The notes beneath the pieces are model-generated. The model saw only the letters and a program-made list of their open reading frames with translations. It had not been told where the DNA came from and made no database searches. A DNA stretch of 64,000 nucleotides from Octopus sinensis (lineage: Eukaryota). The position numbers were made by a program, and so were the translations under genes. The stretch's first letter is position 1, and each line of letters begins with the position of its first letter. The stretch spans positions 3,906,001 to 3,970,000 of the forward strand of contig NC_043020.1 of NCBI RefSeq assembly GCF_006345805.1, given 5' to 3'. This document shows positions 18,896 through 53,098 of the stretch, in pieces.

Positions 18896-19340
18896 TCAAG
18901 TTTTGTTTATGGTCCATTCAAGTAGTGAGTTTTTGTTGGGTGAGTTGTATGCAATTATGGGTGGCTTATCTGGTATTCCTGGAAGGAATCTATCCAGACT
19001 CCGTTTAAAGTTGATGGGATCCTTTTCCTCTTTGATCTCTTTCGGGACAATGTTAAATAGGGCAGGGCCTGTTGAGGAAAAGAAATTATGTTGCAGTGTA
19101 CATGTATGCTGTGATCTTGAATTGGGCAGGGGACGTATGGCCCGTGGTCCCAGTCTTGGATGAACCTTGAAGCTAATGTTCAGGTCGTTTGGGCAAAGTT
19201 GGCGGTATATTCTCCGCATCGTACAAATGATGTACCGCTCACGGCGACGCTGGAGAGAGTAGAGTTTCAAGGCTTTAAGGCGATCCCAATAATCGAGAGC
19301 AGCCATGCCTTCAATTCGTTTAGTGAGTGCCCTCTGGGGT
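18896..19340 (-). mobile_element. CR1/L2-type LINE ORF2 C-terminal fragment
   Basis: ORF 18896-19384 reads TKRIEGM..LDYWDRLKALKLYSLQRRRERY..FKRSLDRFL..IPDKP. Confidence 0.75.
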
Positions 19341-19389
19341 GATTCATACATATATATATAAAATATATATATAAATGTATGCACATGTG

Positions 19390-20104: not shown

Positions 20105-20923
20105 CAATGTACATGTATATGATGATTATCATTATATATGTCTATGTATATAATTATACGGTGGCAAGGATCCTCTAAATTCACGCCATGCAATACTGAT
20201 GATTATGATGCACTACAGAAAAGAAGACGAGACCATTACACACGACGCTCCTCTGTCGTCCAATAAAAACTTACCTCCAGTTCTCGCCTCTATTAACGTT
20301 TAGTGCAGAAGCGATCAACTACAACAAATGTAATACCTTTCCAAAGACATTTAAAGCACCGACTGCTGCCAGAATGGAGCAGATCAACAAAAGATCAACA
20401 GTTGATCAGAAAAATATCGCCAAAGGTAAAAGCAAACATTCAAACACACCGACAGAGCAATACTTAGGAAGAAATGCACGGAGTTACCTGTTCAGTCCCC
20501 TTCGGCAGGCAAAGCTTCGTACTTCTATTATTGCAGTGAACTGAATAAGCGATTCAGTAATGATTCTTACTTGGATATTATGGAGACTACTAGATGTATT
20601 CATGTAGCTATTAGTGTCTATGTATGAAGAGACCAGTGTTTACCTGTATCTAATTGTAAGACTGTGTCTTTGGAAATGGGTTTCATTCAACATCATTATG
20701 CATGTCACAACCTCAATATTTACGATAATAGTTACGTTGAAAAACAATTCCATTCTGTATTTCCAGCCAAGGCGATTTCACGTCGACACGATCGTCGATA
20801 TTTCACTTTCGTTGAGATTACATCAAGCAAGACACGCCAATCGATGTCAGGATGTGAGAGATGTCAGAATCTGATCGATGCAAAAAGAATTTGGAGAGAT
20901 GTTGCAGAGACTAAAACACTCAC

Positions 20924-23900
20924 CTGTTGTCGTTGGTTCTTCAGTTGTGACTGTTGTCGTCGGTGCTGCTGCTGCTGCTTGGTTGTTCCGTTGTTGTTGT
21001 TGTTGTTGTTGTCGGTGGTTGCTCAGTTATTGCTTTTGTTGGTCTCACATTTGCTGTCCTTCATTGACCAATTGTTGTTGTTGGTTGATCAGCTGTTGTT
21101 ATTCATACGTCTTTTGTTGTTCAGACGTACTTTGTTCACTCAGATAATGTTATTGTTTCATCATTTGTTTTCTTCGTTGTTCAGTTTTTATCCTTGGTTG
21201 AAAAGTTGTTGGATGTTCCCTAGTTCAATTCTTGTTGTGGGTTGTTCAGTTGTTGTTGTTGTTGGTTGTTCAGTTGTTGTTGTTGTTGGTTGTTCAGTTG
21301 TTGTTCTTGTTGTATTGTTCACTTGTTGTTGTTGTTGGTTGTTCAGTTGTTATTGTTGTTGTATTGTTCAGTTGTTGTTGTTGTTGGTTGTTCAGTTGTT
21401 GTTGTTGTTGGTTGTTCAGTTGTTGTTGTTGTTGGTTGTTCAGTTGTTATTGTTGTTCTATTGTTCAGTTGTTGTTGTTGTTGGTTGTTCAGTTGTTGTT
21501 ATTGTTGTATTGTTCGGTTGTTGTTGTTGTTGGTTGTTCAGTTGTTGTTATTGTGTTCTTCAGTTGTTGTTGTTGGTTTTTCGGTTGTTGTTGTTGTTGT
21601 TCAGTTGTTATTGTTGTTGGTTGTTCAGTTGTTGTTGTTGTTGTGTTGTTCAGTTGTTGTTGTTGTTGGTTGTTCGGTTGTTGTTGTTGTTGGTTGTTCA
21701 GTTGTTGTTATTGTTGTATTGTTCGGTGTTGTTGTTGTTTGGTTGTTCAGTTGTTGTTATTGTGTTCTTCAGTTGTTGTTGTGGTTTTTTTTCGTTGTTG
21801 TTGTTGTTGTTCAGTTGTTATTGTTGTTGGTTGTTCAGTTGTTGTTGTTGTTGTGTTGTTCAGTTGTTGTTGTTGTTGGTTGTTCGGTTGTTGTTGTTGT
21901 TGGTTGTTCAGTTATTGTTGTTGTTGGATGTTCAGTTGTTGTTGTTGTTGTTCAGTTGTTATTGTTGTTGGTTGTTCGGTTGTTGTTGTTGCGGGTTCTT
22001 CAGTTGTTGTTGTTGTTCAGTTGTTATTGTTGTTGGTTGTTCGGTTGTTGTTGTTGTTGGTTGTTCAGTTGTTGTTGTTGTTGGTTGTCCAGTTGTTGTT
22101 GTTGTTGTTGTTGTTCAGTTGTTATTGTTGTTGGTTGTTCGGTTGTTGTTGTTGTTGGATATTCAGTTGTTGTTGTTGGATGTTCAGTTGTTGTTGTTGT
22201 TGGATGTTCAGTTGTTGTTGTTGTTGGTTGTTCAGTTGTTGTTGTTGTTGGTTGTTCTTTTGTTGTTGTTGTTGGTTGTTCAGTTGTTGTTGTTGTTGGA
22301 TGTTCAGTTGTTGTTGTTGGTTGTTCTGTTTTTGTTGTTGTTGTTGGATGTTCAGTTGTTGTTGTTGTTGGATGTTCAGTTGTTGTTGTTGTTGGTTGTT
22401 CAGTTCTTGTTGTTGTTGTTGGATGTTCAGTTGTTGTTGGTTGTTCTGTTGTTGTTGTTGTTGTTGTTGGATGTTCAGTTGTTGTTGTTGTTGGTTGTTC
22501 AGTTGTTGTTGTTGTTGGATGTTTAGTTGTTGTTGTTGTTGGTTTTTCAGTTGTTGTTGTTGTTGGTTGTTCAGTTGTTGTTGTTGCTGGATGTTCGGTT
22601 GTTGTTGTTGTTGGTTGTCCTGTTGTTGTTGTTGTTGTTGGATGTTCAGTTGTTGTTGTTGTTTGATGTTCAGTTGTTGTTGTTGTTGGTTGTTCAGTTG
22701 TTGTTGTTGTTGGATGTTCAGTTGTTGTTGTTGTTTGTTGTTCTGTTGTTGTGGTTGGATGTTCAGTTGTTGTTGTTGTTGGTTGTTCAGTTGTTGTTGT
22801 TGGATGTTCAGTTGTTGTTGTTGGTTGTTCAGTTGTTGTTGTTGTTGGTTGTTCAGTTGTTGGTTGTTCAGTTGTTGTTGTTGTTGGTTGTTCTGTTGTT
22901 GTTGTTGTTGTTGGATGTTCAGTTGTTGTTGTTGGTTGTTCAGCTGTTGTTGGTTGTTCTGTTGTTGTTGTTGTTGGTTGTCCAGTTGTTGTTGTTGTTG
23001 GATGTTCTGTTGTTGTTGTTGTTGGATGTTCAGTTGTTGTTGTTGTTGGTTATTCAGTTCTTGTTGCTGTTGGATGTTCAGTTGTTGTTGTTGTTGTTGG
23101 ATGTTCAGTTGTTGTTGTTGTTGAATGTTCAGTTGTTGTTGTTGATTTCTGTTGTGTTGTTTTGGTTGTTCTGTTTTGTTGTTGTGGTTGTTCAGTTTTG
23201 TGTTGTTGTTGTTGTTTGTTTGTGTTGTTGTTCAGTTGTTGTTGTTTGTTGGTTGTTGCTGTTGTTGTTGTTGTTGGTGTTCAGTTGTTGTTGTTGTTGG
23301 ATGTTCAGTTGTTGTTGTTGTGGATGTTCAGTTGTTGTTGTTGTTGATGTTCAGTTGTTGTTGTTGTTGTTGTTCAGTTGTTGTGTTGTTGGTTGTTCAG
23401 TTGTTGTGTTGTTGTTGGATGTTCAGTTGTTGTTGTTGGTTGTTCAGTTGTTGTTGGTGTTGGTTGGATGTTCAGTGTTGTTGTTGTTGGTTGTTCAGTG
23501 TTGTTGTTGTTGGTGTTCAGTTGTTTGTTGTTGGATGTTCATTGTTGTTGTTGTTGGTTGTTCAGTTGTTGTTGTTGTTGGTTGTTCAGTTGTTGTTGGT
23601 GTTGGTTGTCAGTTGTTGTTGTTGGATGTTGTTGTGTTGTTGGATGTTCAGTGGTGTTGTTGTTGGTTTTTGTTCAGTTGTTGTCGTTGCGTTGGATGGT
23701 CAATTGTTGTTGTTGTTGGATGTTCAGTTGTTGTTGTTGTTGGTTGTTCAGTTGTTGTTGTTGCTGGATGTTCAGTTGTTGTTGTTGGATGTTCAGTTGT
23801 TGTTGTTGTTGGATGTTCAGTTGTTGTTGTTGTGGTTGTTCAGTTGTTGTTGTTGTTGGATTTTCAGTTGTTGTTGTTAAATGTTCAGTTGTTGTTGTGT

Positions 23901-26900
23901 TGGTGATGTTCAGTTGTTTGTTGTTGTTGGATGTTCGTTGTTGTTGTTGTTGGATGTTCAGTTGTTTTGTTGTTGGATGTTCAGGTTGTGTGTTGTTGGT
24001 TGTTCAGTTTTTGTTGTTGTTGGATGTTCAGTTGTTGTTGTTGTTTGGTTGTTCAGTTGTTGTTGTTGTTGGTGTTCAGTTGTTGTGTTGTTGGTGTTCA
24101 GTTGTTGTTGTTGTTGGTTGTTCAGTGTTGTTGTGTTGGATGTTCCTTGTTGTTGTTGTTGGATGTTCATTGTTGTTGTTGTGGATGTTCAGTTGTTGTT
24201 GTTGTTGGTTGTTCTGGTGTTGTTTTTGTTCGGTTGTTGTTGTTTTGGATGTTCAGTTGTTGTTGTTGGTGCATGTTCATTTGTTGTTGTTGCTGGTTGT
24301 TCAGTTGTTGTGTTGTTGGTGTTCAGTTGTTGTTGTTGTTGGAGTTGTTGTTTGTTGTTGTGGATGTTCAGTTGTTGTTGTTGTTGTTGGATTTCAGTTG
24401 TTGTTGTTGTTGGTTGTTCAATGTTGGTTGTTGGATGTTCAGTTGTTGTTGTTGTTGGATGTCAGTTGTTGTTGTTGTTGGTGTCAGTTGTTGTTGTGTT
24501 GGATGTTCAGTTGTTGTTGTGTTGTTGTGGAGTTCAGTTGTTGTTGGTTGTTCAGTTGTTGTTGTTGTTGTTGTTTGTTCAGTTGTTGTTGTTGTTGGTT
24601 GTTCAGTTGTTGTTGTTGTTGGATGTTCTGTTGTTGTTGTTGCTGGATGTTCAGTTGTTGTTGTTGTTGTTGGATGTTCAGTTGTTGTTGTTGGATGTTC
24701 AGTTGTTGTTGTTGTTGGTTGTTCAGTTGTTGTTGTTGTTGGATGTTCTGTTGTTGTTGTTGTTGGATGTTCAGTTGTTGTTGTTGTTGGATGTTCAGTT
24801 GTTGTTGTTGTTGGTTGTTCAGTTGATGTTGTTGCTGGATGTTCAGTTGTTGTTGTTGGATGTTCAGTTGTTGTTGTTGGTTGGTCAGTTGTTGCTGTTG
24901 TTGGACATTCTGTTGTTGTTGTTGTTGGATGTTCAGTTGTTGTTGTTGTTGGATGTTCAGTTGTTGTTGTTGTTGGTTGTGCAGTTGTTGTTGTTGTTGG
25001 ATGTTCTGTTTTTGTTGTTGTTGGGTGTTCAGTTGTTGTTGTTGTTGGATGTTCAGTTGTTGTTGTTGTTGGTTGTTCAAGTGATGTTGTTGCTGGATGT
25101 TCAGTTGTTGTTGTTGTTGGATGTTCAGTTGTTGTTGTTGTTGGTTGTTCAGTTGTTGTTGTTGTTGGATGTTCTGTTGTTGTTGTTGTTGGATGTTCAG
25201 TTGTTGTTGTTGTTGGATGTTCAGTTGTTGTTGTTGTTGTTGTTCAGGTTGTTGTTGTTGATGTTCTGTTGTTGTTGTTGTTGGATGTTCAGTTTGTTGT
25301 GTTGGTGTTTCAGTTGTTGTTGTTGTGGATGTTCAGTGTTGTTGGTTGTTGTTGTTCAGTTGTGTTGTTGCTGGTTGTTCAGTTGTTGTTGTTGTTGGAT
25401 GTTCAGTTGTTGTTGTTGTGTTGGTTGTTGTGTTGTTGTTATGTTCAGTTGTTGTTGTTGTTGGTTGTTCAGTTGTTGTTTTGTTGGTTGTTCAGTTGTT
25501 GTTGCTGGATGTTCAGTTGTTGTTGTTGTTGTTGATGTCAGTGTTGTTGTTGTGGTTGTTCAGTTGTTGTTGCTGGATGTTCAGTTGTTGTTGTTGTTGG
25601 TTGTTCAGTTGTTGTTGTTGTTGGTTGTTCAGTTGTTGTTGTTGGATGTTCAGTTGTTGTTGTTGTTGGTTGTTCAGTTGTTGTTGTTGGATGTTCAGTT
25701 GTTGTTGTTGTTGGTTGTTCAGTTGTTGTTGTTGGATGTTCTGTTGTTGTTGTTGGATGTTCTGTTGTTGTTGTTGTTGGATGTTCTGTTGTTGTTGGTG
25801 GTTGTTCGTTGTGTTGTTGGATGTTCTGTTGTTGTTTGTTGGTTGTTCAGTTTGTGTTGTGGGTTCAGTTGTTGTTGTTGTTGGTTGTTCAGTTGTTGTT
25901 GCTGGATGTTCAGTTGTTGTTGTTGTTGGTTGTTCAGTTGTTGTTGTTGGATGTTCTGTTGTTGTTGTTGGATGTTCTGTTGTTGTTGTTGTTGGATGTT
26001 CTGTTGTTGTTGTTGTTGGTTGTTCAGTTGTTGTTGTTGGATGTTCTGTTGTTGTTGTTGTTGGATGTTCAGTTGTTGTTGCTGGATGTTCAGTTGTTGT
26101 TGCTGTTGGTTGTTCAGTTGTTGTTGTTGGATGTTCTGTTGTTGTTGTTGTTGGATGTTCAGTTGTTGTTGTTGTTGGTTGTTCAGTTGTTGTTGTTGTT
26201 GGATGTTCAGTTGTTGTTGTTGTTGGTTGTTCAGTTGTTGTTGCTGGATGTTCATTGTTGTTGTTGTTGGTTGTTCAGTTGTTGTTGTTGTTGGATGTTC
26301 AGTTGTTGTTGTTGTTGGTTGTTCAGTTGTTGTTGCTGGATGTTCAGTTGTTGTTGTTGTTGGTTGTTCAGTTTATGTTGTTGCTGGATGTTCAGTTGTT
26401 GTTGTTGTTGGTTGTTCAGTTGTTGTTGTTGGATGTTCTGTTGTTTGTTGTTGGATGTTCAGTTGTTTTGTTGTTGTTGTTGTTCAGTTGTTGTTGTTGT
26501 GTTGGATGTTCCAGTTGTTGTTGTTGGTGGTGTTCAGTGTTGTTGCTGGATGGTTAGTTGTTGTGTTGGATGTTCAGTTGTTGTTGTGTTGGTTGTTCAG
26601 TTGTTGTTGTTGTTGGTTGTTCAGTGTTGTTGTGGATGTTCTGTTGTTGTTGTGTTGGTTGTTGTTCAGTTGTTGTTGTTGGATGTTCTGTTGTTGTTGT
26701 TGTTGGATGTTCAGTTGTTGTTGTTGGATTCAGTTGTTGTTGTTGTTGTTGGTTGTTCAGTTGTTGTTGTTGTTGGTTGTTCAGTTGTTGTTGTTGGATG
26801 TTCTGTTGTTGTTGTTGTTGGTTGTTCAGTTGTTGTTGTTGTTGGTTGTTCAGTTGTTGTTGTTGGATATTCTGTTGTTGTTGTTGGATGTTCAGTTGTT

Positions 26901-29900
26901 GTTGTTGTTGGTTGTTCAGTTGTTGTTGTTGCTGGATTTTCAGTTGTTGTTGTTGTTGGTTGTTCAGTTGTTGTTGTTGGATGTTCAGTTGTTGTTGTTG
27001 ATGGATGTTCAGTTGTTGTTGTTGTTGGTTGTTCAGTTGTTGTTGTTGGACGTTCTGTTGTTGTTGTTGCTGGATGTTCAGTTGTTGTTGTTGTTGGTTG
27101 TTCGGTTGTTGTTGTTGGATGTTCTGTTGTTGTTGTTGATGGATGTTCAGTTGTTGTTGTTGTTGGTTGTTCAGTTGTTGTTGTTGCTGGATTTTCAGTT
27201 GTTGTTGTTGGATATTCTGTTGTTGTTGTTGTTGGATGTTCAGTTGTTGTTGTTGTTGGTTGTTCAGTTGTTGTTGTTGGATATTCTGTGTTGTTTGTTG
27301 ATGTTCAGTTGTTGTTGTTGTTGGTTGTTCAGTTGTTGTTGTTGCTGGATTTTCAGTTGTTGTTGTTGTTGGTGTTCAGTTGTTGTTGTTGGATGTTTAG
27401 TTTGTTGTTGATTGATGTTTCAGTTGTTGTTGTTGTTGTTGTGAGTTGTTGTTGTTGTTGGATGTTCTGTTGTTGTTGTTGTTGCTGGATGTTCAGTTGT
27501 TGTTGTTGTTGGTTGTTCTTGTTGTTGTTGTTGTTGATGTTCTGTGTGTTGTTGTTGGATGTTCAGTTTTTTTGTTGTTGTTGGATGTTCAGTTGTTGTG
27601 TTGTTGGATGTTCGTTGTTGTTGTTGTTGGATGTTCAGTTGTTGTTGTTGTTGGTTGTTCAGTTGTTGTTGTTGTTGGATGTTCAGTTGTTGTTGTTGTT
27701 GGTTGTTCAGTTGTTGTTGTAGGATGTTCAGTTGTTGTTGTTGCTGGATGTTCAGTTGTTATTGTTGTTGGATGTTCAATTGTTGTTGTTGTTGGATGTT
27801 CAGTTGTTGTTAGTTGTTGGTTGTTCAGATGTTGTTGTTGCTGGATGTTCAGTTGTTGTTGTTGTTGGTTGTTCAGTTGTTGCTGTTGGATGTTCAGTTG
27901 TTGTTGCTGCTGGATGTTCAGTTGTTGTGGTTGTTGGATGTTCTGTTGTTGTTGTTGTTGGATGTTCAGTTGTTGTTGTTGTTGGTTGTGCAGTTGTTGT
28001 TGTTGTTGGATGTTCTGTTTTTGTTATTGTTGGGTGTTTAGTTGTTGTTGTTGTTGGATGTTCAGTTGTTTGTTGTTGGTTGTTCAGTGATGTTGTTGCT
28101 GGATGTTCAGTTGTTGTTGTTGTTGGATGTTCAATTGTGTGTTGTTGTTGGTTGTTCAGTTGTTGTTGTTGTTGGATGTTCGTTGTTGTTGTTTGGATGA
28201 TCAGTTGTTGTGTTGTTGGATGTTCAGTTGTTGTGTGTTGGTTGTTGTTCAGTTGTGTTGTTGGGGATGTTCTGGTTGTTGTTTTTGGATGTTCAGTCAT
28301 TGTTGTTGTTGGATGTTCAGTTGTTGTTGTTGTTGGTTGTTCAGTTGTTGTTGTTGTTGGATGTTCTGTTGTTGTTGTTGTTGGATGTTCAGTTGTTGTT
28401 GTTGTTGGTTGTTCAGTTGTTGTTGCTGGATGTTCAGTTGTTGTTGTTGTTGGTTGTTCAGTTGTTGTTGTTGATGGATGTTCAGTTGTTGTTGTTGTTG
28501 GATGTTCAGTTGTTGTTGTTGTTGGTTGTTCAGTTGTTGTTGCTGGATGTTCAGTTGTTGTTGTTGTTGGTTGTTCAGTTGTTGTTGTTGTTGGTTGTTC
28601 AGTTGTTGTTGCTGATGTTCAGTTGTTGTTGTTGTTGGTTGTTCAGTTGTTGTTGATGTTGGTTCTTCAATTGTTGTTGCTGGATGTTCAGTTGTTGTTG
28701 TTGTTGGTTGTTCAGTTGTTGTTGTTGTTGGGTGTTCAGTTGTTGTTGTTGGATGTTCAGTTGTTGTTGTTGTGGGTTGTTCAGTTGTTGTTGCTGGATG
28801 TTCATTTGTTGTTGTTGTCGGTTGTTCAGTTGTTGTTGTTGTTGGTTGTTCAGTTGTTGTTGTTGGATGTTCTGTTGTTGTTGTTGTTGGATGTTCAGTT
28901 GTTGTTGTCGTTGGTTGTTCAGTTGTTGTTGTTGCTGGATGTTCAGTTGTTGTTGTTGTTGTTTGTTCAGTTGTTGTTGTTGGATGTTCAGTTGTTGTTG
29001 CTGGATGTTCTGTTGCTGTTGTTGTTGCTTGTTCAGTTGTTGTTGTTGGATGTTCTGTTGTTGTTGTTGCTGGATGTTCAGGTGTTGTTGTTGTTGGTTG
29101 TTCAGATGTTGTTGTTGTTGGTTGTTCAGTTGTTGTTTTTGTTGTTGTTCAGTTGTTGTAGTTAGATTTTCAGTTGTTGTTGTTGGATGTTGTGTTGTTG
29201 TTGGATGTTCTGTTGTTGTTGTTGCTGGATGTTCAGTTGTTATTGTTGTTGGTTGTTCAGTTGTTGTTGTTGCTGGATGTTCAGTTGTTGTTGTTGTTGG
29301 ATGTTCACTTGTTGTTGTTGGATGTTCTGTTGTTGTTGTTGCTGGATGTTCAGTTGTTGTTGTTGTTGGTTGTTCAGTTGTTGTTGTTGCTAGATGTCCA
29401 GTTGTTGTTGTTGGATGTTCAGTTGTTGTTGTTGTTGGTTGTTCAGTTGTTGTTGTTGGATGTTCTGTTGTTGTTGTTGCTGGATGTTCAATTGTTGTTG
29501 TTGTTGGTTGTTCAGTTGTTGTTGTTGTTGTTTGTTCAGTTGTTGTTGTTGGATGTTCAGTTGTTGTTGTTGGATGATCTGTTGTTGTTGGATGTTCTGT
29601 TGTTGTTGTTGCTGGATGTTCAGTTGTTTTTGTTGTTGGTTGTTCAGTTGTTGTTGTTCCTGGATGTTCAGTTGTTGTTGTTGTTGGATGTTCAGTTGTT
29701 GTTGTTGGATGTTCTGTTGTTGTTGTTGCTGGATGTTCAGTTGTTGTTGTTGTTGGTTGTTCAGTTGTGGTTGTTGCTGGAAGTTCAGTTGTTGTTGTTG
29801 TTGGATGTTCAGTTGTTGTTGTTGTTGGTTGTTCAGTTGTTGTTATTGGATGTTCTGTTGTTGTTGTTGCTGGATGTTCAGTTGTTGTTGTTGTTGGTTG

Positions 29901-32900
29901 TTCAGTTGTTGTTGTTGCTGGATGTTCAGTTGTTGTTGTTGTTGGATGTTCAGTTGTTGTTGTTGGTTGTTCAGTTGTTGTTGCTGGATGTTCAGTTGTT
30001 GTTGTTGTTGGTTGTTCAGTTGTTGTTGTTGTTGGTTGTTCAGTTGTTTTTGCTGGATGTTCAGTTGTTTTTGTTGGTTGTTCAGTTGTTGTTGTTGGAT
30101 GTTCTGTTGTTGTTGTTGTTGGTTGTTCAGTTGTTGTCGCTGGATGTTCAGTTGTTGTTGTTGTTGGCTGTTCAGTTGTTGTTGTTGGATGTTCTGTTGT
30201 TGTTGTTGTTGGTTGTTCAGTTGTTGTTGTTGGATGTTCTGTTGTTGTTGTTGTTGGTTGTTCAGTTGTTGTTGTTGGATGTTCAGTTGTTGTTGTTGTT
30301 GGATGTTCAGTTGTTGTTGTTGTTGGTTGTTCAGTTGTTGTTGTTGGATGTTCAGTTGTTGTTGTTGCTGGATGTTCAGTTGTTGTTGTTGTTGGTTGTT
30401 CAGTTGTTGTTGTTGGATGTTCAGTTGTTGTTGTTGCTGGATGTTCAGTTGTTGTTGTTGGTTGTTCAGTTGTTGTTGTTGGATGTTCAGTTGTTGTTGT
30501 TGCTGGATGTTCAGTTGTTGTTGTTGTAGGATGTTCAGTTGTTGTTGTTGTCGGTTGTTCAGTTGTTGTTGTTGTTGGTTGTTCAGTTGTTGTTGCTGGA
30601 TGTTCAGTTGTTGTTGCTGCTGGATGTTCAGTTGTTGTTGGATGTTCAGTTGTTGTTGTTGCTGGATGTTCAGTTGTTGTTGTGGCTGGATGTTCAATTG
30701 TTTTTGTTGGATGTTCAGTTGTTGTTGTTGCTGGATGTGCAGTTGTTGTTGTTGTTGGTTGTTCAGTTGTTGTTGTTGCATGTTCAGTTGTTGTTGTTGC
30801 TGGATGTTCAGTTGTTTTTGTTGGATGTTCAGTTGTTGTTGTTGCTGGATGTTCAGTTGTTGTTGTTGCTGGATGTTCAGTTGTTGTTGTTGGATGTTAA
30901 GTTGTTGTTGTTGCTGGATGTTCAGTTGTTGTTGTTGTTGGATGTTCAGTTGTTGTTGTTGGATTATCAGTTGTTGTTGCTGCTGGATGTTCAGGTGTTG
31001 TTGTTGGATGTTCAGTTGTTGTTGTTGCTGGATGTTCAGTTGTTTTTGTTGGATGTTCAGTTGTTTTTGTTGCTGGACGTTCAGTTGTTGTTGTTGCTGG
31101 ATGTTCAGTTGTTGTTGTTGGATGTTAAGTTGTTGTTGTTGCTGGATGTTCAGTTGTTGTTGTTGCTGGATGTCCAGTTGTTGTTGTTGGATTATCATTT
31201 GTTGTTGCTGCTGGATGTTCAGGTGTTGTTGTTGGATGTTCAGTTGTTGTTGTTGCTGGATGTTCAGTTGTTGTTGTTGTTGGTTGTTCAGTTGTTGTTG
31301 TTGGATGTTCAGTTGTTGTTGTTGCTGGATGTTCAGATGTTGTTGTTGTTGGTTGTTCAGTTGTTGTTGTTGGTTGTTCAGTTGTTGTTGCTGGATGTTC
31401 AGTTGTTGTTGTTGGATTATCAGTTGTTGTTGCTGCTGGATGTTCAGGTGTTGTTGTTGGATGTTCAGTTGTTATTGTTGCTGGATGTTCAGTTGTTGTT
31501 GCTGTTGGTTGTTCAGTTGTTTTTGTTGGATGTTCAGTTGTTGTTGTTGCTGGATGTTCAGATGTTGTTGTTGTTGGTTGTTCAGTTGTTGTTGTTGGAT
31601 TTCAATTGTTGTTGCTGCTGGATGTTCAGTTGTTGTTGTTGTTGGATGTTCAGTTGTTGTTGTTGTTGGTTGTTCAGTTGTTTTTGTTGTTGGTTGTTCA
31701 GTTGTTTTTGCTGGATGTTCAGTTGTTGTTGCTGGTTGTTCAGTTGTTGTTGTTGGATGTTCTGTTGTTGTTGTTGTTGGTTGTTCAGTTGTTGTTGCTG
31801 GATGTTCAGTTGTTGTTGTTGTTGGTTGTTCATTTGTTGTTGTTGGATGTTCTGTTGTTGTTGTTGTTGGTTGTTCAGTTGTTGTTGTTGGATGTTCTGT
31901 TGTTGTTGTTGTTGGTTGTTCAGTTGTTGTTGCTGGATGTTCAGTTGTTGTTGTTGTTGGTTGTTCAGTTGCTGTTGTTGGATGTTCAGTTGTTGTTGTT
32001 GCTGGATCTTCAGTTATTGTTGTTGTTGGTTGTTCAGTTGTTGTTGTTGGATGTTCAGTTGTTGTTGTTGCTGGATGTTCAGTTGTTGTTGTTGTTGGTT
32101 GTTCAGTTGTTGTTGTTGGATGTTCAGTTGTTGTTGTTTGATGTTCAGTTGTTGTTGCTGCTGGATGTTCAGTTGTTGTTGTTGTAGGATGTTCAGTTGT
32201 TGTTGTTGTTGGTTGTTCAGTTGTTGTTGTTGTTGGTTGTTCAGTTGTTGTTGTTGGATGTTCTGTTGTTGTTGTTGTTGGTTGTTCAGTTGTTGTTGTT
32301 GGATGTTCAGTTGTTGTTGTTGCTGGATGTTCAGTTTTTGTTGTTGTTGGATTTACAGTTGTTGTTGTTGGATGATCATTTGTTGTTGTTGCTGGATGTT
32401 CAGTTGTTGTTGTTGTTGGTTGTTCAGTTGTTGTTGTTGGATGTTCAGTTGTTGTTGTTGCTGGATGTTCAGTTGTTGTTGTTGTTGGTTGTTCAGTTGT
32501 TGTTGTTGGATGTTCAGTTGTTGTTGTTGCTGGATGTTCAGTTGTTGTTGTTGTTGGATGTTTAGTTGTTGTTCTTGGATGTTCTGTTGTTGTTGTTGTT
32601 GGATGTTCAGTTGTTGTTGTTGTTGGTTGTTCAGTTGTTGTTGCTGGATGTTCAGTTGTTGTTGTTGTTGGTTGTTCAGTTGTTGTTGTTGGATGTTCTG
32701 TTGTTGTTGTTGCTGGATGTTCAGTTGTTGTTGTTGTTGGTTGTTCTGTTGTTGTTGTTGGATGTTCAGTTGTTGTTGTTGCTGGATGTTCAGTTGTTGT
32801 TGTTGGATGTTCAGTTGTTGTTGTTGTTGGTTGTTCAGTTGTTGTTGCTGGATATTCACTTGTTGTTGTTGTTGGTTGTTGTTCAGTTGTTGTGTTGTTG

Positions 32901-35796
32901 GTGTTCAGTTGTTGTTGCTGTTGGATGTTCAGTTGTTGTGTTGTGCTTGTTCAGTGTTGTTGTTGGATGTGTATTGTTGTTGTTGTTGGTTGTTCAGTTG
33001 TTGTTGCTGGATGTTCATCTGTTGTTGTTGCTGGATGTTCAGTTGTTGTTGTTGTTGGATGTTCTGTTGTTGTTGTTGTTGTTTGTTCAGTTGTTGTTGT
33101 TGCTGGATGTTCAGTTGTTGTTGTTGTTGGATGTTCAGTTGTTGTGTTGTTGTTTGTTCAGTTGTTGTTGTTGTTGGTTGTTCAGTTGTTGTTGCTGGAT
33201 GTTCAGTTGTTTTTGTTGCTGGATGTTCAGTTGTTGTTGTTGTTGGATGTTCTGTTGTTGTTGTTGTTGGTTGTTCAGTTGTTGTTGATGGATGTTCAGT
33301 TGTTGTTGTTGTTGGATGTTCAGTTGTTGTTGTTGTTGGTTGTTCAGTTGTTGTTGCTGGATGTTCATCTGTTGTTGTTGCTGGATGTTCAGTTGTTGTT
33401 TTTGTTGGATGTTCTGTTGTTGTTGTTGTTGGTTGTTCAGTTGTTGTTGTTGGATATTCAGTTGTTGTTGTTGCTGGATGTTCAGTTGTTGTTGTTGTTA
33501 GATGTTTAGTCGTTGTTGTTGTTGGTTGTTCAGTTGTTGTTGTTGCTGGATGTTCAGTTATTGTTGTTGCTGTATGTTCAGTTGTTGTTGTTGTTTGATG
33601 TTCTGTTGTTGTTGTTGTTGGTTGTTCAGTTGTTGTTGTTGGATGTTCAGTTGTTGTTGTTGCTGGATGTTCAGTTGTTGTTGTTGTTGGTTGTTCAGTT
33701 GTTGTTGTTGGATGTTCAGTTGTTGTTGTTGCTGGATGTTCAGTTGTTGTTGTTGTTGGATGTTTAGTTGTTGTTGTTGTTGGTTGTTCAGTTGTTGTTG
33801 CTGGATATTCACTTGTTGTTGTTGTTGGTTGTTCAGTTGTTGTTGTTGTTGGTTGTTCAGTTGTTGTTGCTGTTGGATGTTCAGTTGTTGCTGTTGTTGC
33901 TTGTTCAGTTGTTGTTGTTGGATGTTCTATTGTTGTTGTTGTTGGTTGTTCAGTTGTTGTTGCTGGATGTTCAGTTGTTGTTGTTGTTGTTTGTTCAGTT
34001 ATTGTTGTTGCTGGATGTTCAGTTGTTGTTGTTGTTGGATGTTCAGTTGTTGTTGTTTTGTGGGTTGTTCAGTTGTTGTTGTTTGGATGTTTCAGTTGTT
34101 GTTGTTGTTGTTGTCAGTTGTTGTTTTTTAGGTTGTTCAGTTGTTGTTGCGGAGGTTCAGCGTTGTTGTTGTTGGTTGTTCAGGTTGTTGTTTGTTGGAG
34201 TTCAGTTGTTTTGTGTTGTTGGATGTTCAGTTGTTTGTTGTTGTTGTGCGTTGTTCAATTGTTGTTGTGTTTGGATGTTCATTGTTGTTGTTGTTGGGAT
34301 GTTCAGTTGTTGTTGTTGGATGTCAGTTGTTGTTGTTGTTGGATGTTCAGTGTTGTTGTTGTTGGTTGTTCAGTTTTGGTTGTTGTTGGGATGTGTTCAA
34401 GTTGTTGTTGTTGTTGGTTGTTCAGTGTTGCTGTTGTTGGTTGTTCAGTGTGCGTTGTTGTGGAGGTTTCGTTGTTTTTGTTGGTTGGATGTTCAGTTGT
34501 TGTTGTTGTTGGTTTTTCAGTTGTTGTTTGTTGTTGGTTGTTCAGTTGACTTGTTGTTGGCTGTCTGTTGTTTAGTTTTTGTTGTTGTTGGATGGTTACT
34601 GTTTGTTGTTGTTTGTTGTTTGGTTGTTCAATGTTGTTCTTGGATGTTACAATTGTTGTTGTTGTTGGATGCTTCAGTTATTGTTGTTGTTGGTGGTTCA
34701 GTTTGTTGTTGTGTTGGTTGTTCAGGTGTTGCTGTTGTGGATGTTCAGTGTTGTTGTTGTTGGTTGTTCAGTTGTTGTTTGTTGTTGTGGATGTATTCAA
34801 TTGTTGTTGTTGTTGGATGTTCGTTATTGTTGGTGTTGTTCAGTTATGTTGTTGTTGGTTGTTTCAGTGGTTGACTGTTGTTGTGATGTTCTGTTGTTGT
34901 TGTTGTTGGATGTTCAGTGTGTTGTGTTGTTGGATGTTCAGGTGTGTTGTTGTTGGTTGTTAGTTTGTTGTTGTTGCTCGGATGTTCAGTTGTTGTTGTT
35001 GTTGGTTGTTCAGTTGTGTTGTTGTTGGATGTTCAGTATTGTTGTTGTTGTTTGTCAGTTGTTGTTGTGTTGTTGGTGGTTGTTCAGTTGTTGGTTGTTT
35101 GGATTGTTTAGTTGGTGTTGTTGTTGGATCGTTTCATTTGTTGTTGGTTGTTGGTTGTTGAGTCGTTGTTGTTGTTGGATGTTCAGTTGTTGTTGTTGTT
35201 GATGTTCAGTTTGTTGTTGTTGGGTTGTTCTTGTTGTTGTTTGTCTGTCGGGTGTTGTTGGTGTTGGATGTCAGTGGTTGTTGTTGTGTGTTGTTTCAGT
35301 TGCTTTTGTTGTTGGTTGTTCAGTTGTTGTTGTTGTTGGATGTTCTGTGTGTTGTTGGGATGCAGTTGTTGTTGTTGTTGGATGTTCAGTTGTTTTGTTG
35401 TTGGTTGTTCAGTTGTTGTTTTTGTTGTTGGATGTTTTGTTGTTTTGTTGGTGTTGGAGTTGTTTGTTGTTTTTGTTGGTTGTTCAGTTGTTGTTGTTGC
35501 TGGATGTTCAGTTGTTTTTGTTGTTGGATCTTCAGTTGCTGTTGTTGTTGGGTGTTCAGTTGTTGTTGTTGTTGGTTGTTCAGTTGTTGTTGTTGCTGGA
35601 TGTTCAGTTGTTGTTGTTGTTGGATCTTCAGTTGCTGTTGTTGTTGGATGTTCAGTTGTTGTTGTTGTTGGTTGTTCAGTTGTTGTTGTTGTTGGTTGTT
35701 CTGTTGTTGTTTGTTGTTCGGTTGTTGTTGTTACTTCAGTCGTGGCTGTTGTTGTTAATTCTTCAGTCGTGCCTGTTGTTGATTGTTGTTCAGTAT
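20924..35796 (-). CDS. Mucin exon of cassette 1, ~14.9 kb, (T3-5-E-Q/H-P)n, frameshifted in this assembly
   Basis: Same acceptor (ttttacag|ATACTGAAC) and opening TEQQSTTGTTEELTTTA as the other copies. Donor CAG|gtgagt at 20924. Length 14873 is not a multiple of 3 and there are many 1-nt indels. Confidence 0.6.
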
Positions 35797-35959
35797 CTGT
35801 AAAAATATAATGCATGTTACACAATCTGTATTGCTAAAGCGTATCACACTTTCATGTGTTTTGGGGAGTGGTAACTCTCACTGATACATTGTTGTGTCGA
35901 AATTCACTATAAATCATATATACTAAGAAAGTTAAATAGTCGTAGTATTTGTTGTAGTT

Positions 35960-36069
35960 GTTGTAGTAGTTAGGTAGTAGTAGTAGTAGTAGTAGTAGTA
36001 GTACTAGTAGTAGTGGTGGTGGTAGTGGTTGTAGTCGCAGTCGTAGTAGTAGTAGTAGTACTAGTAGTT

Positions 36070-36116
<47 letters not shown>

Positions 36117-36225
36117 TTTAGGAGTTGTATTTGTAGTAGTAGTAGTATTTGTAGTTGGAGTATTATTTGTAGTAGTAGTAGTAGTAGTAGTAGTTGTAGT
36201 AGTAGTAGCAGTAGAAGGAGGAGGA
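35960..36225. repeat. Intronic (TAG/ACT)n microsatellite; shorter versions at ~44018-44170 and ~53058-53225
   Basis: Seen directly at the same intron position in all three cassettes. Confidence 0.9.
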
Positions 36226-36329
36226 TTAGTTCATTTCATTGTTGTTGCCTTAGAAATATGTTATCGTTTTATCCTGATAAAATTTAATGTGAAAGAATAT
36301 AATACACCTTTTCGAATCTTTGCACTTAC

Positions 36330-36482
36330 TTTCGGAATTCACTTTCGTCTTTTCTCCTATGACACCTGTAATATTATTGATGGTTTCGCGGACAATCTCT
36401 ACCTGGGGATCTGCACGTTTGAATTCCATAATCAGGTCTGCAATCAGGCTACCGTTTCTGAAATCAAGAAAGATAATCTTTA
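36330..36482 (-). CDS. SEA-domain C-terminal exon, cassette 1
   Basis: Reads KIIFLDFRNGSLIADLIMEFKRADPQVEIVRETINNITGVIGEKTKVNSE. Donor GAAA|gtaagt at 36330 (phase 1, matches the mucin exon). The acceptor is ambiguous: 36457, 36482 or 36486. Confidence 0.75.
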
Positions 36483-36741
36483 CTAACTGCACGAGCATTT
36501 TACGAGAATTTGCAGAAGAACTTGTTATATTTGTGCAATAACAGAAATCACAAGCAGAGATTTTCTCTCAACTCTGTTCATAAAATCCCTCTTGGTTTAC
36601 CTCTTTATGAATCAGTGCAAACGGCGTGATCTCCACCCTACATCGTGGAACAGGGCCTGCCTCACTTCAGAGAGCTAAGCAAATCCAGTTGAGAATGCAG
36701 ACAAACCCTGGCCAGAGATTGTTATTGCTAGAGAGCCATAC

Positions 36742-36789
36742 GTATGGCAGTAATAATCTTTCGTAGATTTTGATTCTTTAAAATATCGC
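36742..36789 (-). CDS. Candidate optional 48-nt phase 1-1 exon within the SEA domain (homologues near 44.7 kb and 53.75 kb)
   Basis: cttcag|GC GAT ATT TTA AAG AAT CAA...GCC ATA C|gtatgg reads (S)DILKNQNLRKIITAI. Length and open frame are kept in all three copies, but the splice sites are only moderate. Confidence 0.25.
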
Positions 36790-37282
36790 CTGAAGATTTA
36801 GCGCTTTCTCTTCCTTTTATGCAAACTATCAAATTCAGCCTGAATGTCCAGAACATTCACACACGCTTCTATTCCCTATCACTTGCTGGGGGTCACTTGA
36901 TTTTCACGACTATGCCAAAATCAAATATTTTTGCCAATTGCCCATTCACTTCCCTATAACAGCCTCTAACAACCCGCGTCGTTGCGCACCAACTGTCGAC
37001 AGTGTTTTCTCACTTGTGAATTCCTTAATTCCTTCAAACATGTATCCACGAAACTTTCCTTGACCGCTTTTCCATCAGCTCTAATATACTCCCTGCCATC
37101 GCTTGCATTTCTCATCTTTTTGCTTCTCCTTATAACAAAGAAAGACTCATCGACACACATGATATTCAGTTTCATTACCCTTCCATATCTGCACGTATGT
37201 GTCAGCCACAAAATATTCTGAGACATATTGTCGAATAATCGCTGACACCTCTAAAGAAGAAAGTCTATAATACTACGTGTGT

Positions 37283-37314
<32 letters not shown>

Positions 37315-37408
37315 TTGTGTAATTGAACCGTATATAAAAGAGACTTCACCGATAGAACTGACCTTAATTGTGTAACATTATTGCCAAGATATGTGTCCTC
37401 CAACTCAC

Positions 37409-37430
37409 TGTTTTCCATAGATTCATCGAC
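37409..37430 (-). CDS. 22-nt microexon (VDESMEN), cassette 1
   Basis: tttttgtgtttttag|GTCGATGAATCTATGGAAAACA|gtgagt: strong acceptor and donor, phase 0 to 1. Confidence 0.6.
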
Positions 37431-38239
37431 CTAAAAACACAAAAATAAAATTCAACATGGCTGAAATGAATGTTGATTATTGTCGCGTTTGCATTTAAGA
37501 GAAATGCTAATTGAGTATATTTACTACTTTATTACTTTTATCATTCTCTCTAGTTGAAGATTACTTTCTTCCTACACCCCTATCCTTCGAGCTCACAATT
37601 ATGTATATTTCATGATAACAATTATCATGAAACAATATATAAATTAATATTTTAACAATAAAAATCAAACACAATTCAATTAAAAAATTAAGTAATATTG
37701 TTATATATATATACGTTACTTATCTTATCGGAGAACATTTTATAACTGAATCTTAAACGTGAAAATGTGTTAGCGTTTATAAGAAATTAAACTCGTGAAG
37801 ATGTTTGTAAAAGGATAGAATAAATTTATTAATGAAAATGACGAAATATATTTATTAATGAAAATAACGAAAAATATTTAAGCTTCTAGAAGCAAAGAAT
37901 AAGAGAACAACAAATCTATAAATGACTATTTCCTATAAATTTTACAATCCTAATAATCATTACGTAAAATATACATATTATATATAAATTAATTTATATT
38001 ACTATAATTAATACATCTTAATAAATTTATATATTCATTTATTTATTAAGAAATATCCAAGTTTAAACGTATTCAGATATAGTAATATAACATATAATAT
38101 TATGCTAATTTATACACTAACACTACTGAATTATATCTTCAATAAATAAGTAACATACAATAAGGTTTTATATATCCGGAAAACCTATTATATAGGTAAG
38201 TGAATTTATGTTTGCATGTAATTATACGCTCTTCGAGTT

Positions 38240-38459
38240 AATTGAACGGTACATGATTATAATTATATAATATTTCCTTAAATTCATTATTACACAATAA
38301 ACAAGAATTACTCCCTATACAATATGATTTTGCCTTACAAACTTTCTCCCAAGTTAATTTATAGTTAATACATTTAGATCTAAGTTCCCAAATATATTTA
38401 CTGAGGCCTGTTGAATTAATTAGATTTTTATTCCTGAAAGAATACATGAGTTGAGCCAC
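38240..38459 (-). mobile_element. Penelope-like GIY-YIG endonuclease C-terminal fragment (also 46233-46442 and 55295-55516)
   Basis: SFRNKNLINSTGLSKYIWELRSK.INYKLTW....AKSY....CLLCNNE matches the NST.LSKYIW..C.LC signature. Confidence 0.75.
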
Positions 38460-38471
38460 TCTTAATTTATT

Positions 38472-38680
38472 TTGAAGGATATTCCTATAGCATCTAGAAA
38501 TGAATATATTTTAAAACTTAATGAAGATTTTATTACTAGGATTCAATGGAAATCCTACTATAATAGTTGTAACATATCTAACATTAATTATGTAGAGAAT
38601 AATAATAATATTAAGTCAAAGTTTAAATCTACGAAGGAACCCCTATATAATAGAGAAATACAGGTTTAAGAGAACAATGT
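38472..38680 (+). mobile_element. Penelope-like ORF N-terminal fragment, divergent from the GIY-YIG piece (also ~46450-46620 and 55529-55730)
   Basis: KDIPIASRNEYILKLNEDFITRIQWKSYY..FKSTKEP resembles the KNIP.PS..Y..KL...E.FI.RMRWK..GFKS pattern of Penelope ORFs. Confidence 0.55.
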
Positions 38681-38843
38681 TTGGAAGGTAGTGTAAACTA
38701 TGGTCCACTGATGGATGATAACAGCATTCTGCAACATGATGCGAAAGAAAATTGAAGAAACCTCCAGAAGCACTGCAGAAACAATACTGCTCTGTCTTTA
38801 GAGTGAAGTTACCTGATTATTATTATACTAAAATCCATCTTAC

Positions 38844-38956
38844 CTTTGCAGAAATATCAGCAACCTTCGCTTGTGTCTCAGCATTATTAAGATCCGAATA
38901 TATAGCTTTGTATTCCTCATTCAAGTGCATTTCTACATTGACCGAACTAGTAACAC
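38844..38956 (-). CDS. SEA-domain N-terminal exon, cassette 1
   Basis: atttcttctacag|GT GTT ACT...GCA AAG|gtaaga, 113 nt, phase 1 to 0. Reads VTSSVNVEMHLNEEYKAIYSDLNNAETQAKVADISAK. Confidence 0.75.
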
Positions 38957-39020
38957 CTGTAGAAGAAATGACAGTGTGACAATCTGTAAAATTCTTGGCC
39001 TTTAATTATCATTATTATTA

Positions 39021-39098
<78 letters not shown>

Positions 39099-39100
39099 CA

Positions 39101-39725
<625 letters not shown>

Positions 39726-39908
39726 AGAGAGAGAAAGAGAGAGAAAGATAGATTACAAAAGTTGTGGAGAATATCAGTATTTTCTAATCTACATATGGGT
39801 GTTTTCTAAAGAATATAATTTTCGATCTGATATGTTGGTTGGACTCAAAGAGCAAATGAAATCGACACAACAACACGCAAACACACACCCAAACACAAAA
39901 AAACAGAA

Positions 39909-44018: not shown

Positions 44019-44071
<53 letters not shown>

Positions 44072-46992: not shown

Positions 46993-47606
<614 letters not shown>

Positions 47607-53059: not shown

Positions 53060-53098
<39 letters not shown>

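What the first reader, a model, noticed from the sequence alone, without database searches (positions are those of the whole stretch)
20924..35796. Homologous mucin exon expanded to ~14.9 kb with a different repeat alphabet (TEQP/TEHP)
Seen: the exon keeps the same splice sites and the same opening residues as the 2973-nt and 4113-nt copies. Its interior is replaced by ~18-24-nt (CAA)n-based units encoding T3-5-E-Q-P, T3-5-E-H-P or TEHPA. The Val-Thr dipeptide of the TTVTTEEPT unit is lost and E-E-P has become E-Q/H-P. Inference: one paralogous exon switched from a 27-nt minisatellite to a slippage-prone microsatellite-like array and grew about 4-5 fold. If intact it would encode roughly 5000 aa with regularly spaced His, a chemically distinct mucin segment.
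Basis: partly seen in the sequence, partly recalled or inferred. Interest (0 to 1): 0.75.

Follow-up and report, generated by a model that had tools for sequence, protein, structure and literature searches.

The report
Decayed mucin-like exon turned minisatellite
The 14.9-kb repeat really is an expanded copy of a neighbouring threonine-rich (mucin-like) exon with a changed repeat unit, but it has lost its reading frame about 90 times and carries stop codons, so it is most likely a dead exon growing as non-coding repeat DNA, not a giant histidine-bearing mucin.

Summary
On the minus strand, 20924..35796 has the same acceptor, the same donor and the same first 20 codons as the intact exons at 40900..43872 (2973 nt) and 48801..52913 (4113 nt). 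Its interior is built of 24/21-nt units reading TEQPTTTT, TEHPATTT and TEHPTTT. V-T junctions fall to 1, TEEP to 2, and TEQP/TEHP rise to 165/209.

The copy is not an intact exon:
- Its length is 14873 nt, which is 2 mod 3.
- The E-[Q/H]-P motif changes frame 90 times.
- About 20% of unit spacings are not multiples of 3, against 0/92 and 0/133 in the two short copies.
- The entry frame stops at codon 204, and the last ~300 nt have stops in all frames.
- Nonsense substitutions sit in the local Thr frame. One GAA>TAA occurs in both copies of a 228-nt higher-order repeat, so the array kept growing after it stopped being translatable.

Sequencing error explains this poorly. The short copies are clean, frame breaks cluster regionally (P=4e-15), and nearly all homopolymers are 2 nt or shorter.

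No relative was found in any public collection searched, so the species and transcription remain untested.

Verdict: a pseudo-exon that became a minisatellite. It is ordinary in kind and of modest interest.

The parts
20924..35796 (-). Copy A: exon-derived tandem array (pseudo-exon). It is 14873 nt long, about 510 units of 24/21 nt, and has no continuous reading frame.
35797..35810 (-). Acceptor TTATATTTTTACAG, identical in all three copies.
20918..20923 (-). Donor GTGAGT (GTAAGT in B and C). The exon ends with 1 nt of a split codon (phase 1).
35400..35796 (-). The 5' part that is still in the entry frame. It has 20 ancestral codons and then TEQP/TEHP/TEDP units. The first frame change lies between 35410 and 35387.
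35183..35185 (-). First stop codon in the entry frame (codon 204).
28600..34050 (-). Homogeneous core of the array. It has few frame changes (motif runs of 30, 6, 1, 49, 92 and 20) and higher-order periods of 45, 69 and 228 nt.
31125..31127 (-). GAA>TAA nonsense codon in the local Thr frame, in higher-order repeat copy 1.
30897..30899 (-). The same GAA>TAA nonsense codon in higher-order repeat copy 2, 228 nt away. The two copies are 97% identical.
23050..23052 (-). CAA>TAA nonsense codon in the local Thr frame.
20924..21240 (-). Decayed 3' end of copy A. Units are eroded by substitutions and there are stops in all three frames. The last stop in the exit frame is 34 codons before the donor. Only the final TVTTEEPTTT unit is ancestral.
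40900..43872 (-). Copy B: an intact PTS (Pro/Thr/Ser-rich repeat) exon of 2973 nt. It has 991 open codons and 27/30-nt units (TTTVTTEEP).
48801..52913 (-). Copy C: an intact PTS (Pro/Thr/Ser-rich repeat) exon of 4113 nt. It has 1371 open codons and 27-nt units, with an excess of synonymous changes.
35797..39549 (-). Upstream (intron-like) part of duplication unit A. It is homologous to 43873..47440 and 52914..56536.
20116..20923 (-). Downstream part of duplication unit A. It is homologous to 40090..40899 and 47991..48800 (97% identical).
18201..18418 (-). Candidate downstream terminal coding exon (inferred only). It has a TTTTACAG acceptor and 71 T/S/P-rich codons followed by TAA. It is in frame with the phase-1 donors of A, B and C.
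   Evidence: no homologue found

Best explanation
Copy A is a dead paralogue of a mucin-like PTS (Pro/Thr/Ser-rich repeat) exon. An ~8-kb module, made of one large Thr/Glu/Pro-repeat exon plus its intron, was duplicated in tandem to give three copies on the minus strand.

Two copies, B and C, stay under reading-frame constraint. In the third copy (A, the most 3'), one variant unit became the founder of a new 24-nt unit. This variant is the TEQPTTTTVT unit minus the 6 nt that code V-T. The new unit is almost pure (CAA)n and so is more prone to slippage and unequal exchange.

The copy then lost its reading frame and evolved without coding constraint. It picked up about 90 frame-breaking 1-2-nt indels and several nonsense substitutions. 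Meanwhile its core kept being amplified as higher-order repeats, up to 14.9 kb.

All three exons are symmetric: phase 1 at both ends, and B and C are multiples of 3. Skipping A would therefore keep the message in frame, which would let the gene tolerate A's decay.

Shown directly: the homology, the unit derivation, the loss of frame, the stop codons, and amplification after a nonsense mutation. Inferred: that A is skipped or untranslated, that the three exons belong to one gene, and that the product is a secreted O-glycosylated mucin-like protein.
For: - Homology and boundaries.
- Founder unit with the 6-nt deletion.
- Length: 14873 mod 3 = 2.
- Frame changes: the E-[Q/H/E]-P motif forms 91 frame runs in A but a single run in each of B and C. 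Only 39% of the motifs lie in the entry frame.
- Unit spacings that are not a multiple of 3: 95/479 in A against 0/92 in B and 0/133 in C. A second way of splitting the units gives 97/512.
- Stops: the first stop in the entry frame is at codon 204. Entry and exit frames differ, and the last ~300 nt have stops in all frames.
- Eight stops lie inside frame-consistent Thr-frame runs. They include GAA>TAA at 31127 and at 30899, in two 97%-identical copies of a 228-nt higher-order repeat, and CAA>TAA at 23052.
- Synonymous share of substitutions: C 0.48 and B 0.28, against 0.28 expected at random; A is 0.19.
- Neutral yardstick: the intron flanks of B and C differ by 10 non-3n gap events in ~4.3 kb, yet their exons have none. 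My derived A-lineage flank rate is about 2.9 per kb, against about 6.3 per kb inside array A.

Against an assembly artefact:
- Frame breaks are strongly regional (chi-square 100, df 14, P=4e-15).
- Nearly all homopolymers are 2 nt or shorter, and both -1 (32) and +1 (20) changes occur.
- No exact internal duplicate of 200 nt or more exists.
Against: - There are no reads, no RNA data and no second assembly, so neither the array length nor any individual indel could be checked independently.
- Both splice sites of A are intact. At 3-5% divergence that is expected by chance, but it leaves inclusion of A possible.
- Frame-breaking units are mostly singletons (83 distinct among 95). That fits neutral decay, but it would also fit random consensus errors.
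- Substitution load does not correlate significantly with frame-break density across bins (rho 0.2, P 0.48).
- B shows no synonymous excess, so the constraint on B rests on frame and stop preservation only.
- The rest of the gene was not identified. No signal-peptide exon and no other domains were found.
Confidence: 0.72

Rival explanations
1. Copy A is a real, intact giant exon encoding a ~5000-aa TEQP/TEHP mucin domain. On this view the frame breaks are consensus errors of a long-read assembly in an array that is hard to polish.
For: - The window comes from a scaffolded assembly with a 100-N gap at 58466..58565.
- Most frame breaks are single 1-nt changes and are not shared between units.
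- The splice sites are intact.
Against: - The equally repetitive arrays B and C, 7.1 kb in the same assembly, have no frame break at all.
- Breaks are absent from the array core (3 of 140 units) and dense towards the edges. The distribution is strongly non-uniform (P=4e-15), although the sequence context is the same throughout.
- Nearly all homopolymers are 2 nt or shorter.
- Substitution-type nonsense codons and a 3' end eroded by substitutions would remain even if every indel were removed.
- No protein among 5.8 billion resembles the TEHP/TEQP tract.
Confidence: 0.06
2. Copy A is still spliced into some transcripts, and only its 5' part is translated. That part is about 105 codons of TEQP/TEHP/TEDP units followed by an out-of-frame Q/N-rich tail up to the stop at codon 204. 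The result would be a truncated isoform or a transcript targeted by nonsense-mediated decay.
For: - The acceptor, the branch region and the donor are intact.
- The first ~390 nt remain in the entry frame.
Against: - A 14.9-kb internal exon with a premature stop followed by a donor site would normally be degraded.
- There is no evidence of transcription.
- The open 5' part is what a recently decayed copy would be expected to show anyway.
Confidence: 0.15
3. None of the three arrays is coding. The whole cluster would then be a satellite-like repeat with fortuitous open frames.
For: - No homologue, no domain and no signal-peptide exon were found.
- Stop codons are rare by composition in CAA-rich sequence.
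- Substitutions in B look neutral.
Against: - B and C are exact multiples of 3, and every one of their 225 unit spacings is a multiple of 3.
- Their flanks, in contrast, carry non-3n indels.
- C has a clear synonymous excess, 0.48 against 0.28 expected.
- The arrays are bounded by canonical acceptor and donor sites in the same phase.
Confidence: 0.05

Closest known systems
Central PTS/VNTR exons of animal mucins, such as vertebrate MUC1, MUC2 and MUC5AC. Pajic et al. 2022 (PMC9417175) define mucins operationally by T/S-rich exonic repeats.
   Same: B and C are single large exons made of head-to-tail units whose length is a multiple of 3. They are rich in Thr and Pro (T about 53%, P about 9%) and differ in unit number between paralogues. 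A derives from such an exon.
   Different: No vWD, CysD, SEA or any other mucin domain, and no signal peptide, was found in the window. The homology searches gave only compositional hits. A itself has no open frame. The exon-plus-intron module is triplicated, which is different from a single VNTR exon.
Pseudo-exons and pseudogenised tandem duplicates (own knowledge of the category).
   Same: A is homologous to functional paralogous exons and keeps their boundaries. It also has disabling frameshifts and nonsense codons, and it lacks a coding-type substitution pattern.
   Different: Most pseudo-exons shrink or erode. This one expanded about 4-5 fold after, or while, losing its frame. Whether it is excluded from mRNA is untested.
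Minisatellites and satellite arrays with higher-order repeat structure (own knowledge of the category).
   Same: - The array has 21-24-nt units and strong strand asymmetry.
- It has higher-order periods of 45, 69 and 228 nt.
- It has a homogeneous, recently amplified core and degenerate edges.
   Different: Its origin from a coding exon can be traced base by base. It also lies between intact splice signals.
Insect and other invertebrate Thr-rich secreted proteins, such as Drosophila salivary glue Sgs3-type repeats and peritrophin-type linkers (own knowledge). Full-text hits for the string TTTEQP came from a paper on the mite allergen Der p 23; that paper was not opened.
   Same: They have short Thr-rich repeats that include Glu, Gln and Pro.
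   Different: The similarity is in composition only. No homology was shown, and no chitin-binding or other domain was found here.

Membership tests
Mucin-type PTS repeat exon (coding) | A continuous open reading frame through tandem repeats rich in Thr/Ser/Pro. | tested here: not met
   A has 188 stops in the entry frame, the first at codon 204, and 90 frame changes. The feature is met by B (991 codons) and C (1371 codons), which have 0 stops.
Mucin-type PTS repeat exon (coding) | Unit lengths and total exon length are multiples of 3. | tested here: not met
   A is 14873 nt (2 mod 3), and 95/479 spacings are not 3n. B has 0/92 and C has 0/133 such spacings, with lengths of 2973 and 4113 nt.
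Mucin-type PTS repeat exon (coding) | A substitution pattern showing protein-level constraint. | tested here: not met
   The synonymous share is 0.19 in A, against 0.28 expected at random. C is 0.48 and B is 0.28.
Mucin-type PTS repeat exon (coding) | A secreted protein with a signal peptide and dense O-glycosylation. | not testable with these tools
   No convincing signal-peptide exon was found. Glycosylation needs biochemistry.
Mucin-type PTS repeat exon (coding) | The exon is transcribed and spliced into mRNA. | not testable with these tools
   No RNA data are available, and the locus is absent from the public collections searched.
Pseudo-exon / pseudogenised paralogous copy | Homology to a functional paralogue, with conserved boundaries. 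| tested here: met
Pseudo-exon / pseudogenised paralogous copy | Disabling mutations that are not explained by sequencing error. | tested here: met
   Nonsense substitutions lie at 31127, 30899 (a duplicated higher-order repeat) and 23052, and the 3' end is eroded by substitutions. Indels cluster regionally and are absent from B and C. Confirmation at read level was not possible.
Pseudo-exon / pseudogenised paralogous copy | Exclusion from the mature mRNA, or no translation. | not testable with these tools
   No transcript data are available.
Minisatellite with higher-order structure | Head-to-tail units of 10-100 nt in a long array, with higher-order periodicity. | tested here: met
   Tandem Repeats Finder gives period 24 (626 copies), plus periods 45 and 69. 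A 228-nt higher-order repeat is 97% identical between its two copies. Lag analysis agrees.
Minisatellite with higher-order structure | Length polymorphism between individuals. | not testable with these tools
   Only one assembly is available.

The most novel reading that the evidence does not exclude
The frame breaks and stops are assembly or allele artefacts. In the animal, A would then be an intact ~15-kb exon, so that one gene carries two chemically different mucin domains: acidic TTTVTTEEP, and TEQP/TEHP with a His roughly every 8-16 residues. Such a domain could have pH- or metal-dependent gel behaviour.
Probability: 0.05. Interest if true: 0.55.

Novelty: new member of a known kind. Interest (0 to 1): 0.25.

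Why it matters
The main value is a correction. Gene models or repeat-based mucin screens that translate this array would report a spurious giant His-rich mucin.

It is also a clean natural example of what happens to a coding minisatellite once frame constraint is lifted. The founder unit can be identified (a 6-nt deletion that removes V-T). The intact sister exons give an internal control, and a nonsense-bearing higher-order repeat shows that amplification continued after coding capacity was lost. That is useful for people who study the evolution of mucin and VNTR exons, but it does not open a new class of system.

Tried and rejected
- Long plus-strand ORFs inside the array, up to 1176 aa. I rejected these as a composition artefact. 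The plus strand is almost free of A, so stop codons cannot form, and the ORFs read as poly-L/V/C.
- Protein search with exon C. It gave only compositional hits: Streptococcus surface proteins, fish mucins and similar. There was no homologue and no self-hit.
- Protein search with a 158-aa TEHP/TEQP tract. Nothing scored E<=1e-5.
- Species identification through the LINE (non-LTR retrotransposon) tail ORF at 18896..19384. The best hit was 71% identical. Named hits were ctenophores and a shrimp at 42-45%, so the clade is unresolved.
- Exact-protein look-ups for two window ORFs. Neither is on record.
- Two exact-pattern scans of metagenome contigs, one with an A-type unit pair and one with the shared exon start. 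Both found nothing.
- Full-text searches for the peptide units. Nothing relevant turned up.
- Pfam scan of 10 flanking ORFs, the candidate terminal exon and part of exon B. Only a weak RVT_1 hit appeared.
- Representative-library search with the candidate terminal exon. The single hit (E=1e-4) is an unrelated repetitive ORF that matched 17 times, so I dismissed it.
- Rfam scan. It found only a tRNA.
- BLAST self-comparison for long near-identical blocks inside A. This was uninformative, so I replaced it with k-mer counting.
- Correlation of substitution load with frame-break density. It was not significant.
- My first permissive unit tokenisation created false frame breaks. I discarded it and used instead.
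Full report
**1. What is there**

The feature lies on the minus strand. Three blocks show extreme strand asymmetry: 21-36 kb, 41-44 kb and 49-53 kb. Tandem Repeats Finder finds three arrays:
- 21232..35726, period 24, 626 copies, with periods 45 and 69 also reported.
- 40900..43870, period 27.
- 48802..52911, period 27.

Self-comparison shows that these arrays sit inside a tandem triplication of an ~8-kb unit. The non-array flanks are 95-97% identical in every pair.

Pattern matching places identical boundaries in all three copies. The acceptor is TTTTTACAG|ATACTGAAC and the donor is ACAACAG|GTRAGT. This gives three exons:
- A = 20924..35796, 14873 nt.
- B = 40900..43872, 2973 nt.
- C = 48801..52913, 4113 nt.

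**2.

In the frame set by the splice sites (phase 1 at both ends), B and C are open for 991 and 1371 codons. Both read TEQQSTTGTTEELTTTATTEEP followed by TTTVTTEEP units. A starts with the same 20 residues.

The interior of A is made of 24-nt and 21-nt units: TEQPTTTT (85 identical copies), TEHPATTT (29), TEHPTTTT (25), TEHPTTT (24) and TEHPATT (15).

| Copy | V-T junctions | TEEP | TEQP | TEHP |
|---|---|---|---|---|
| A | 1 | 2 | 165 | 209 |
| B | 48 | 52 | 4 | 0 |
| C | 81 | 93 | 7 | 0 |

(All counts.)

The alignment of the exon starts shows where the new unit came from. The conserved third unit of B/C is 30 nt, ACTGAACAACCAACAACAACAACAGTCACA (TEQPTTTTVT). In A it carries a 6-nt deletion that removes V-T, which gives the 24-nt TEQPTTTT. 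So TEQP is an old minority variant that was amplified. His (CAA>CAT) and Ala (ACA>GCA) are later single-base variants. The (ACA)n runs are longer in A, with a mode of 4 against 3 in B and C.

**3. Copy A is not an intact exon**

- Its length, 14873 nt, is 2 mod 3, so its inclusion would shift the frame.
- The 9-nt E-[Q/H/E]-P motif occurs 472 times and switches frame 90 times. It forms one single frame run in each of B and C. Only 39% of the motifs lie in the entry frame.
- Among spacings between unit anchors, 95 of 479 are not multiples of 3. The figures are 0 of 92 in B and 0 of 133 in C. A second tokenisation gives 97 of 512.
- Read from the acceptor, the frame is lost after about 105 codons, and the first stop is codon 204 at 35185. 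In total that frame has 188 stops.
- Read backwards from the donor, the last stop is only 34 codons upstream. The last ~300 nt have stops in all three frames.
- Even inside frame-consistent runs there are 8 stops in the local Thr frame. These include the clear nonsense substitutions GAA>TAA at 31127 and 30899 and CAA>TAA at 23052. The same test gives 0 stops in 968 codons for B and 0 in 1349 codons for C.
- The longest open stretch that starts in the Thr frame is 765 codons (30896..28602), and its end already reads Q/N-rich.

**4. Real decay or assembly error?**

No reads or second assembly could be obtained, so this rests on internal evidence.

- Internal control. B and C are equally repetitive and lie in the same assembly, yet they have no frame break in 7.1 kb.
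- Regional clustering. Frame breaks affect 3 of 140 units between 28.9 and 32.9 kb. They affect 26 of 62 units between 22.9 and 24.9 kb, and 15 of 28 between 33.9 and 34.9 kb. The test across bins gives chi-square 100, df 14, P=4e-15. The sequence context is the same everywhere. The core, which is the hardest part to polish, is the cleanest part.
- Context of the changes. Nearly all homopolymers are 2 nt or shorter. Both -1 (32) and +1 (20) net changes occur.
- Nonsense substitutions and the 3' end eroded by substitutions are not indel-type errors.
- The TAA at 31127 and the TAA at 30899 sit at the same position in two copies of a 228-nt higher-order repeat. These copies are 97% identical and share other rare variants. 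The nonsense mutation was therefore copied when the array grew.
- No exact internal duplicate of 200 nt or more exists in A. The array is therefore not a stack of identical blocks of the kind an over-expanding assembler would produce.
- Neutral yardstick. The B and C flanks differ by 10 non-3n gap events in ~4.3 kb, while their exons have none. My derived estimate for the A-lineage flank rate is about 2.9 per kb, against about 6.3 per kb inside A. That is plausible for slippage-prone DNA evolving neutrally over the same time.

There are also weak points. Most frame-breaking units are singletons (83 distinct among 95). Substitution load does not track frame-break density.

**5. Constraint on the sister copies**

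C shows a synonymous excess, 0.48 of substitutions against 0.28 expected. B is at the random expectation, but it keeps its frame and has no stops. A is below expectation at 0.19. B and C therefore behave as coding exons and A does not.

**6. Most likely history and mechanism (inference)**

An exon-plus-intron module was triplicated by unequal exchange. The unit junctions carry (ATAG)n and (AC)n microsatellites at 39545..39753 and 47437..47642.

In the most 3' copy, a V-T-less TEQP unit created a longer uninterrupted (CAA)n tract. Slippage (the 21/24-nt heterogeneity) and unequal exchange (the 45-, 69- and 228-nt higher-order repeats) then expanded it.

Once the frame was lost, indels and stops accumulated, most of all at the older edges, while the core continued to be amplified.

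All three exons are phase 1-1, and B and C are multiples of 3. Skipping A therefore leaves the message in frame.

A candidate downstream exon fits this picture. It has the acceptor TTTTACAG|AC at 18418, then 71 T/S/P-rich codons and TAA at 18203..18201. It is in frame with all three donors. It has no homologue, so it remains a lead only.

**7. Comparison with what is known**

By the operational definition used by Pajic et al. 2022 (PMC9417175), mucins are proteins with heavily O-glycosylated T/S-rich exonic repeats. B and C look like mucin-type PTS (Pro/Thr/Ser-rich repeat) exons. Secretion, glycosylation and expression are all untested, and no classical mucin domain was found.

A fails the defining features of a coding PTS exon: an open frame, 3n periodicity and coding constraint. 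It meets those of a pseudo-exon and of a minisatellite with higher-order structure.

No relative of either repeat type was found in the 5.8-billion-protein collection, in metagenome contigs, in the exact-protein look-ups or in the literature. The species was not identified. The transposon-based search only points to a marine invertebrate.

**8. Verdict**

- Observation: confirmed.
- Interpretation: partly supported. A is a paralogous exon with a new unit and a 4-5-fold expansion. It is not a ~5000-aa His-bearing mucin segment.
- Best explanation: a decayed exon that evolves as a non-coding minisatellite, confidence about 0.7.
- Novelty: a new member of a known kind. Interest is modest.

Noticed in passing
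window 18201..18418 (-): A candidate terminal coding exon. Its acceptor is ctcttttacag|AC, and its 71 codons read PPRQWYGAWNRQSGDTTVGVTQSTAEPQPTPTGQQPSTTTAATSTLTNIFSTVTELLSTTTGQSSKTTNLF, followed by TAA. It is in frame with the phase-1 donors of exons A, B and C. It is one of only 2 of 29 acceptor-like sites downstream of A that open 60 or more codons in that phase. No Pfam family and no real homologue was found.
   Followed up: partly
window 17950..18150 (-): A second acceptor-like site (cttcttttcacag|AA) follows. After it comes another P/T/H-rich open stretch, and a PTGQSSTT/STTTGPPS-like stretch lies in another frame. This may be a further or alternative exon, or decayed PTS sequence.
   Followed up: no
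window 35937..36214, ~44014..44170, ~53055..53228: A (TAC)n/(ACT)n microsatellite lies ~140 nt upstream of each PTS-exon acceptor, and it is longest in unit A. On the minus strand one of its frames reads poly-Thr.
   Followed up: no
window 39545..39753 and 47437..47642: (ATAG)n plus (AC)n/(AT)n microsatellites sit at the junctions between the ~8-kb duplication units. They are possible substrates for the unequal exchange that made the triplication.
   Followed up: no
window 56063..56744 and 57225..57911: A ~0.7-kb segment from the far-upstream end of each unit is repeated once more, 1.16 kb further on (92% identity). It lies just before the assembly gap. A fourth unit could be hidden in that gap.
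   Followed up: no
window 58466..58565: A run of 100 N marks a scaffold gap, so the region upstream of exon C is not contiguous.
   Followed up: no
window 6049..6121 (+): A tRNA-Phe (GAA) gene. It scores 69.8 bits in Rfam and is also found by ARAGORN.
   Followed up: yes
window 7600..8700 (-), 59200..61350 (-), 9526..11105 (+), 18896..19384 (-), 627..1025 (+): Non-LTR retrotransposon debris. There are two frame-shifted reverse-transcriptase copies that are 75-77% alike, an RVT_1 fragment, and a LINE tail ORF. The best database relatives of the LINE tail ORF are unnamed marine metagenome ORFs, ctenophores and a shrimp.
   Followed up: partly
window 36330..36498, 44273..44441, 53327..53495 (-): Each unit has an ATG-started 56-codon ORF (MLVQLVKIIFLDFRNGS...) that ends at a phase-1 GTAAGT donor, ~410 nt upstream of the PTS exon. 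It does not look like a signal peptide and is probably chance. If it were real, the units would be three separate genes.
   Followed up: no
window 20664..35810 (+): The plus strand of array A has many long ORFs, up to 1176 aa, that read poly-Leu/Val/Cys. This is an artefact of a strand almost devoid of A.
   Followed up: yes
window 38241..38510, 55298..55567 (-): Two of the units share a conserved ~90-aa ORF inside the intron (…LSKYIWELRSK.INYKLTWEKVCKAKSYC…CLLCNNEFKEIL), in units A and C; no ORF of at least 75 aa was listed at the matching place in unit B. It resembles a transposon-derived motif seen in many invertebrate genomes. It has no Pfam hit.
   Followed up: partly
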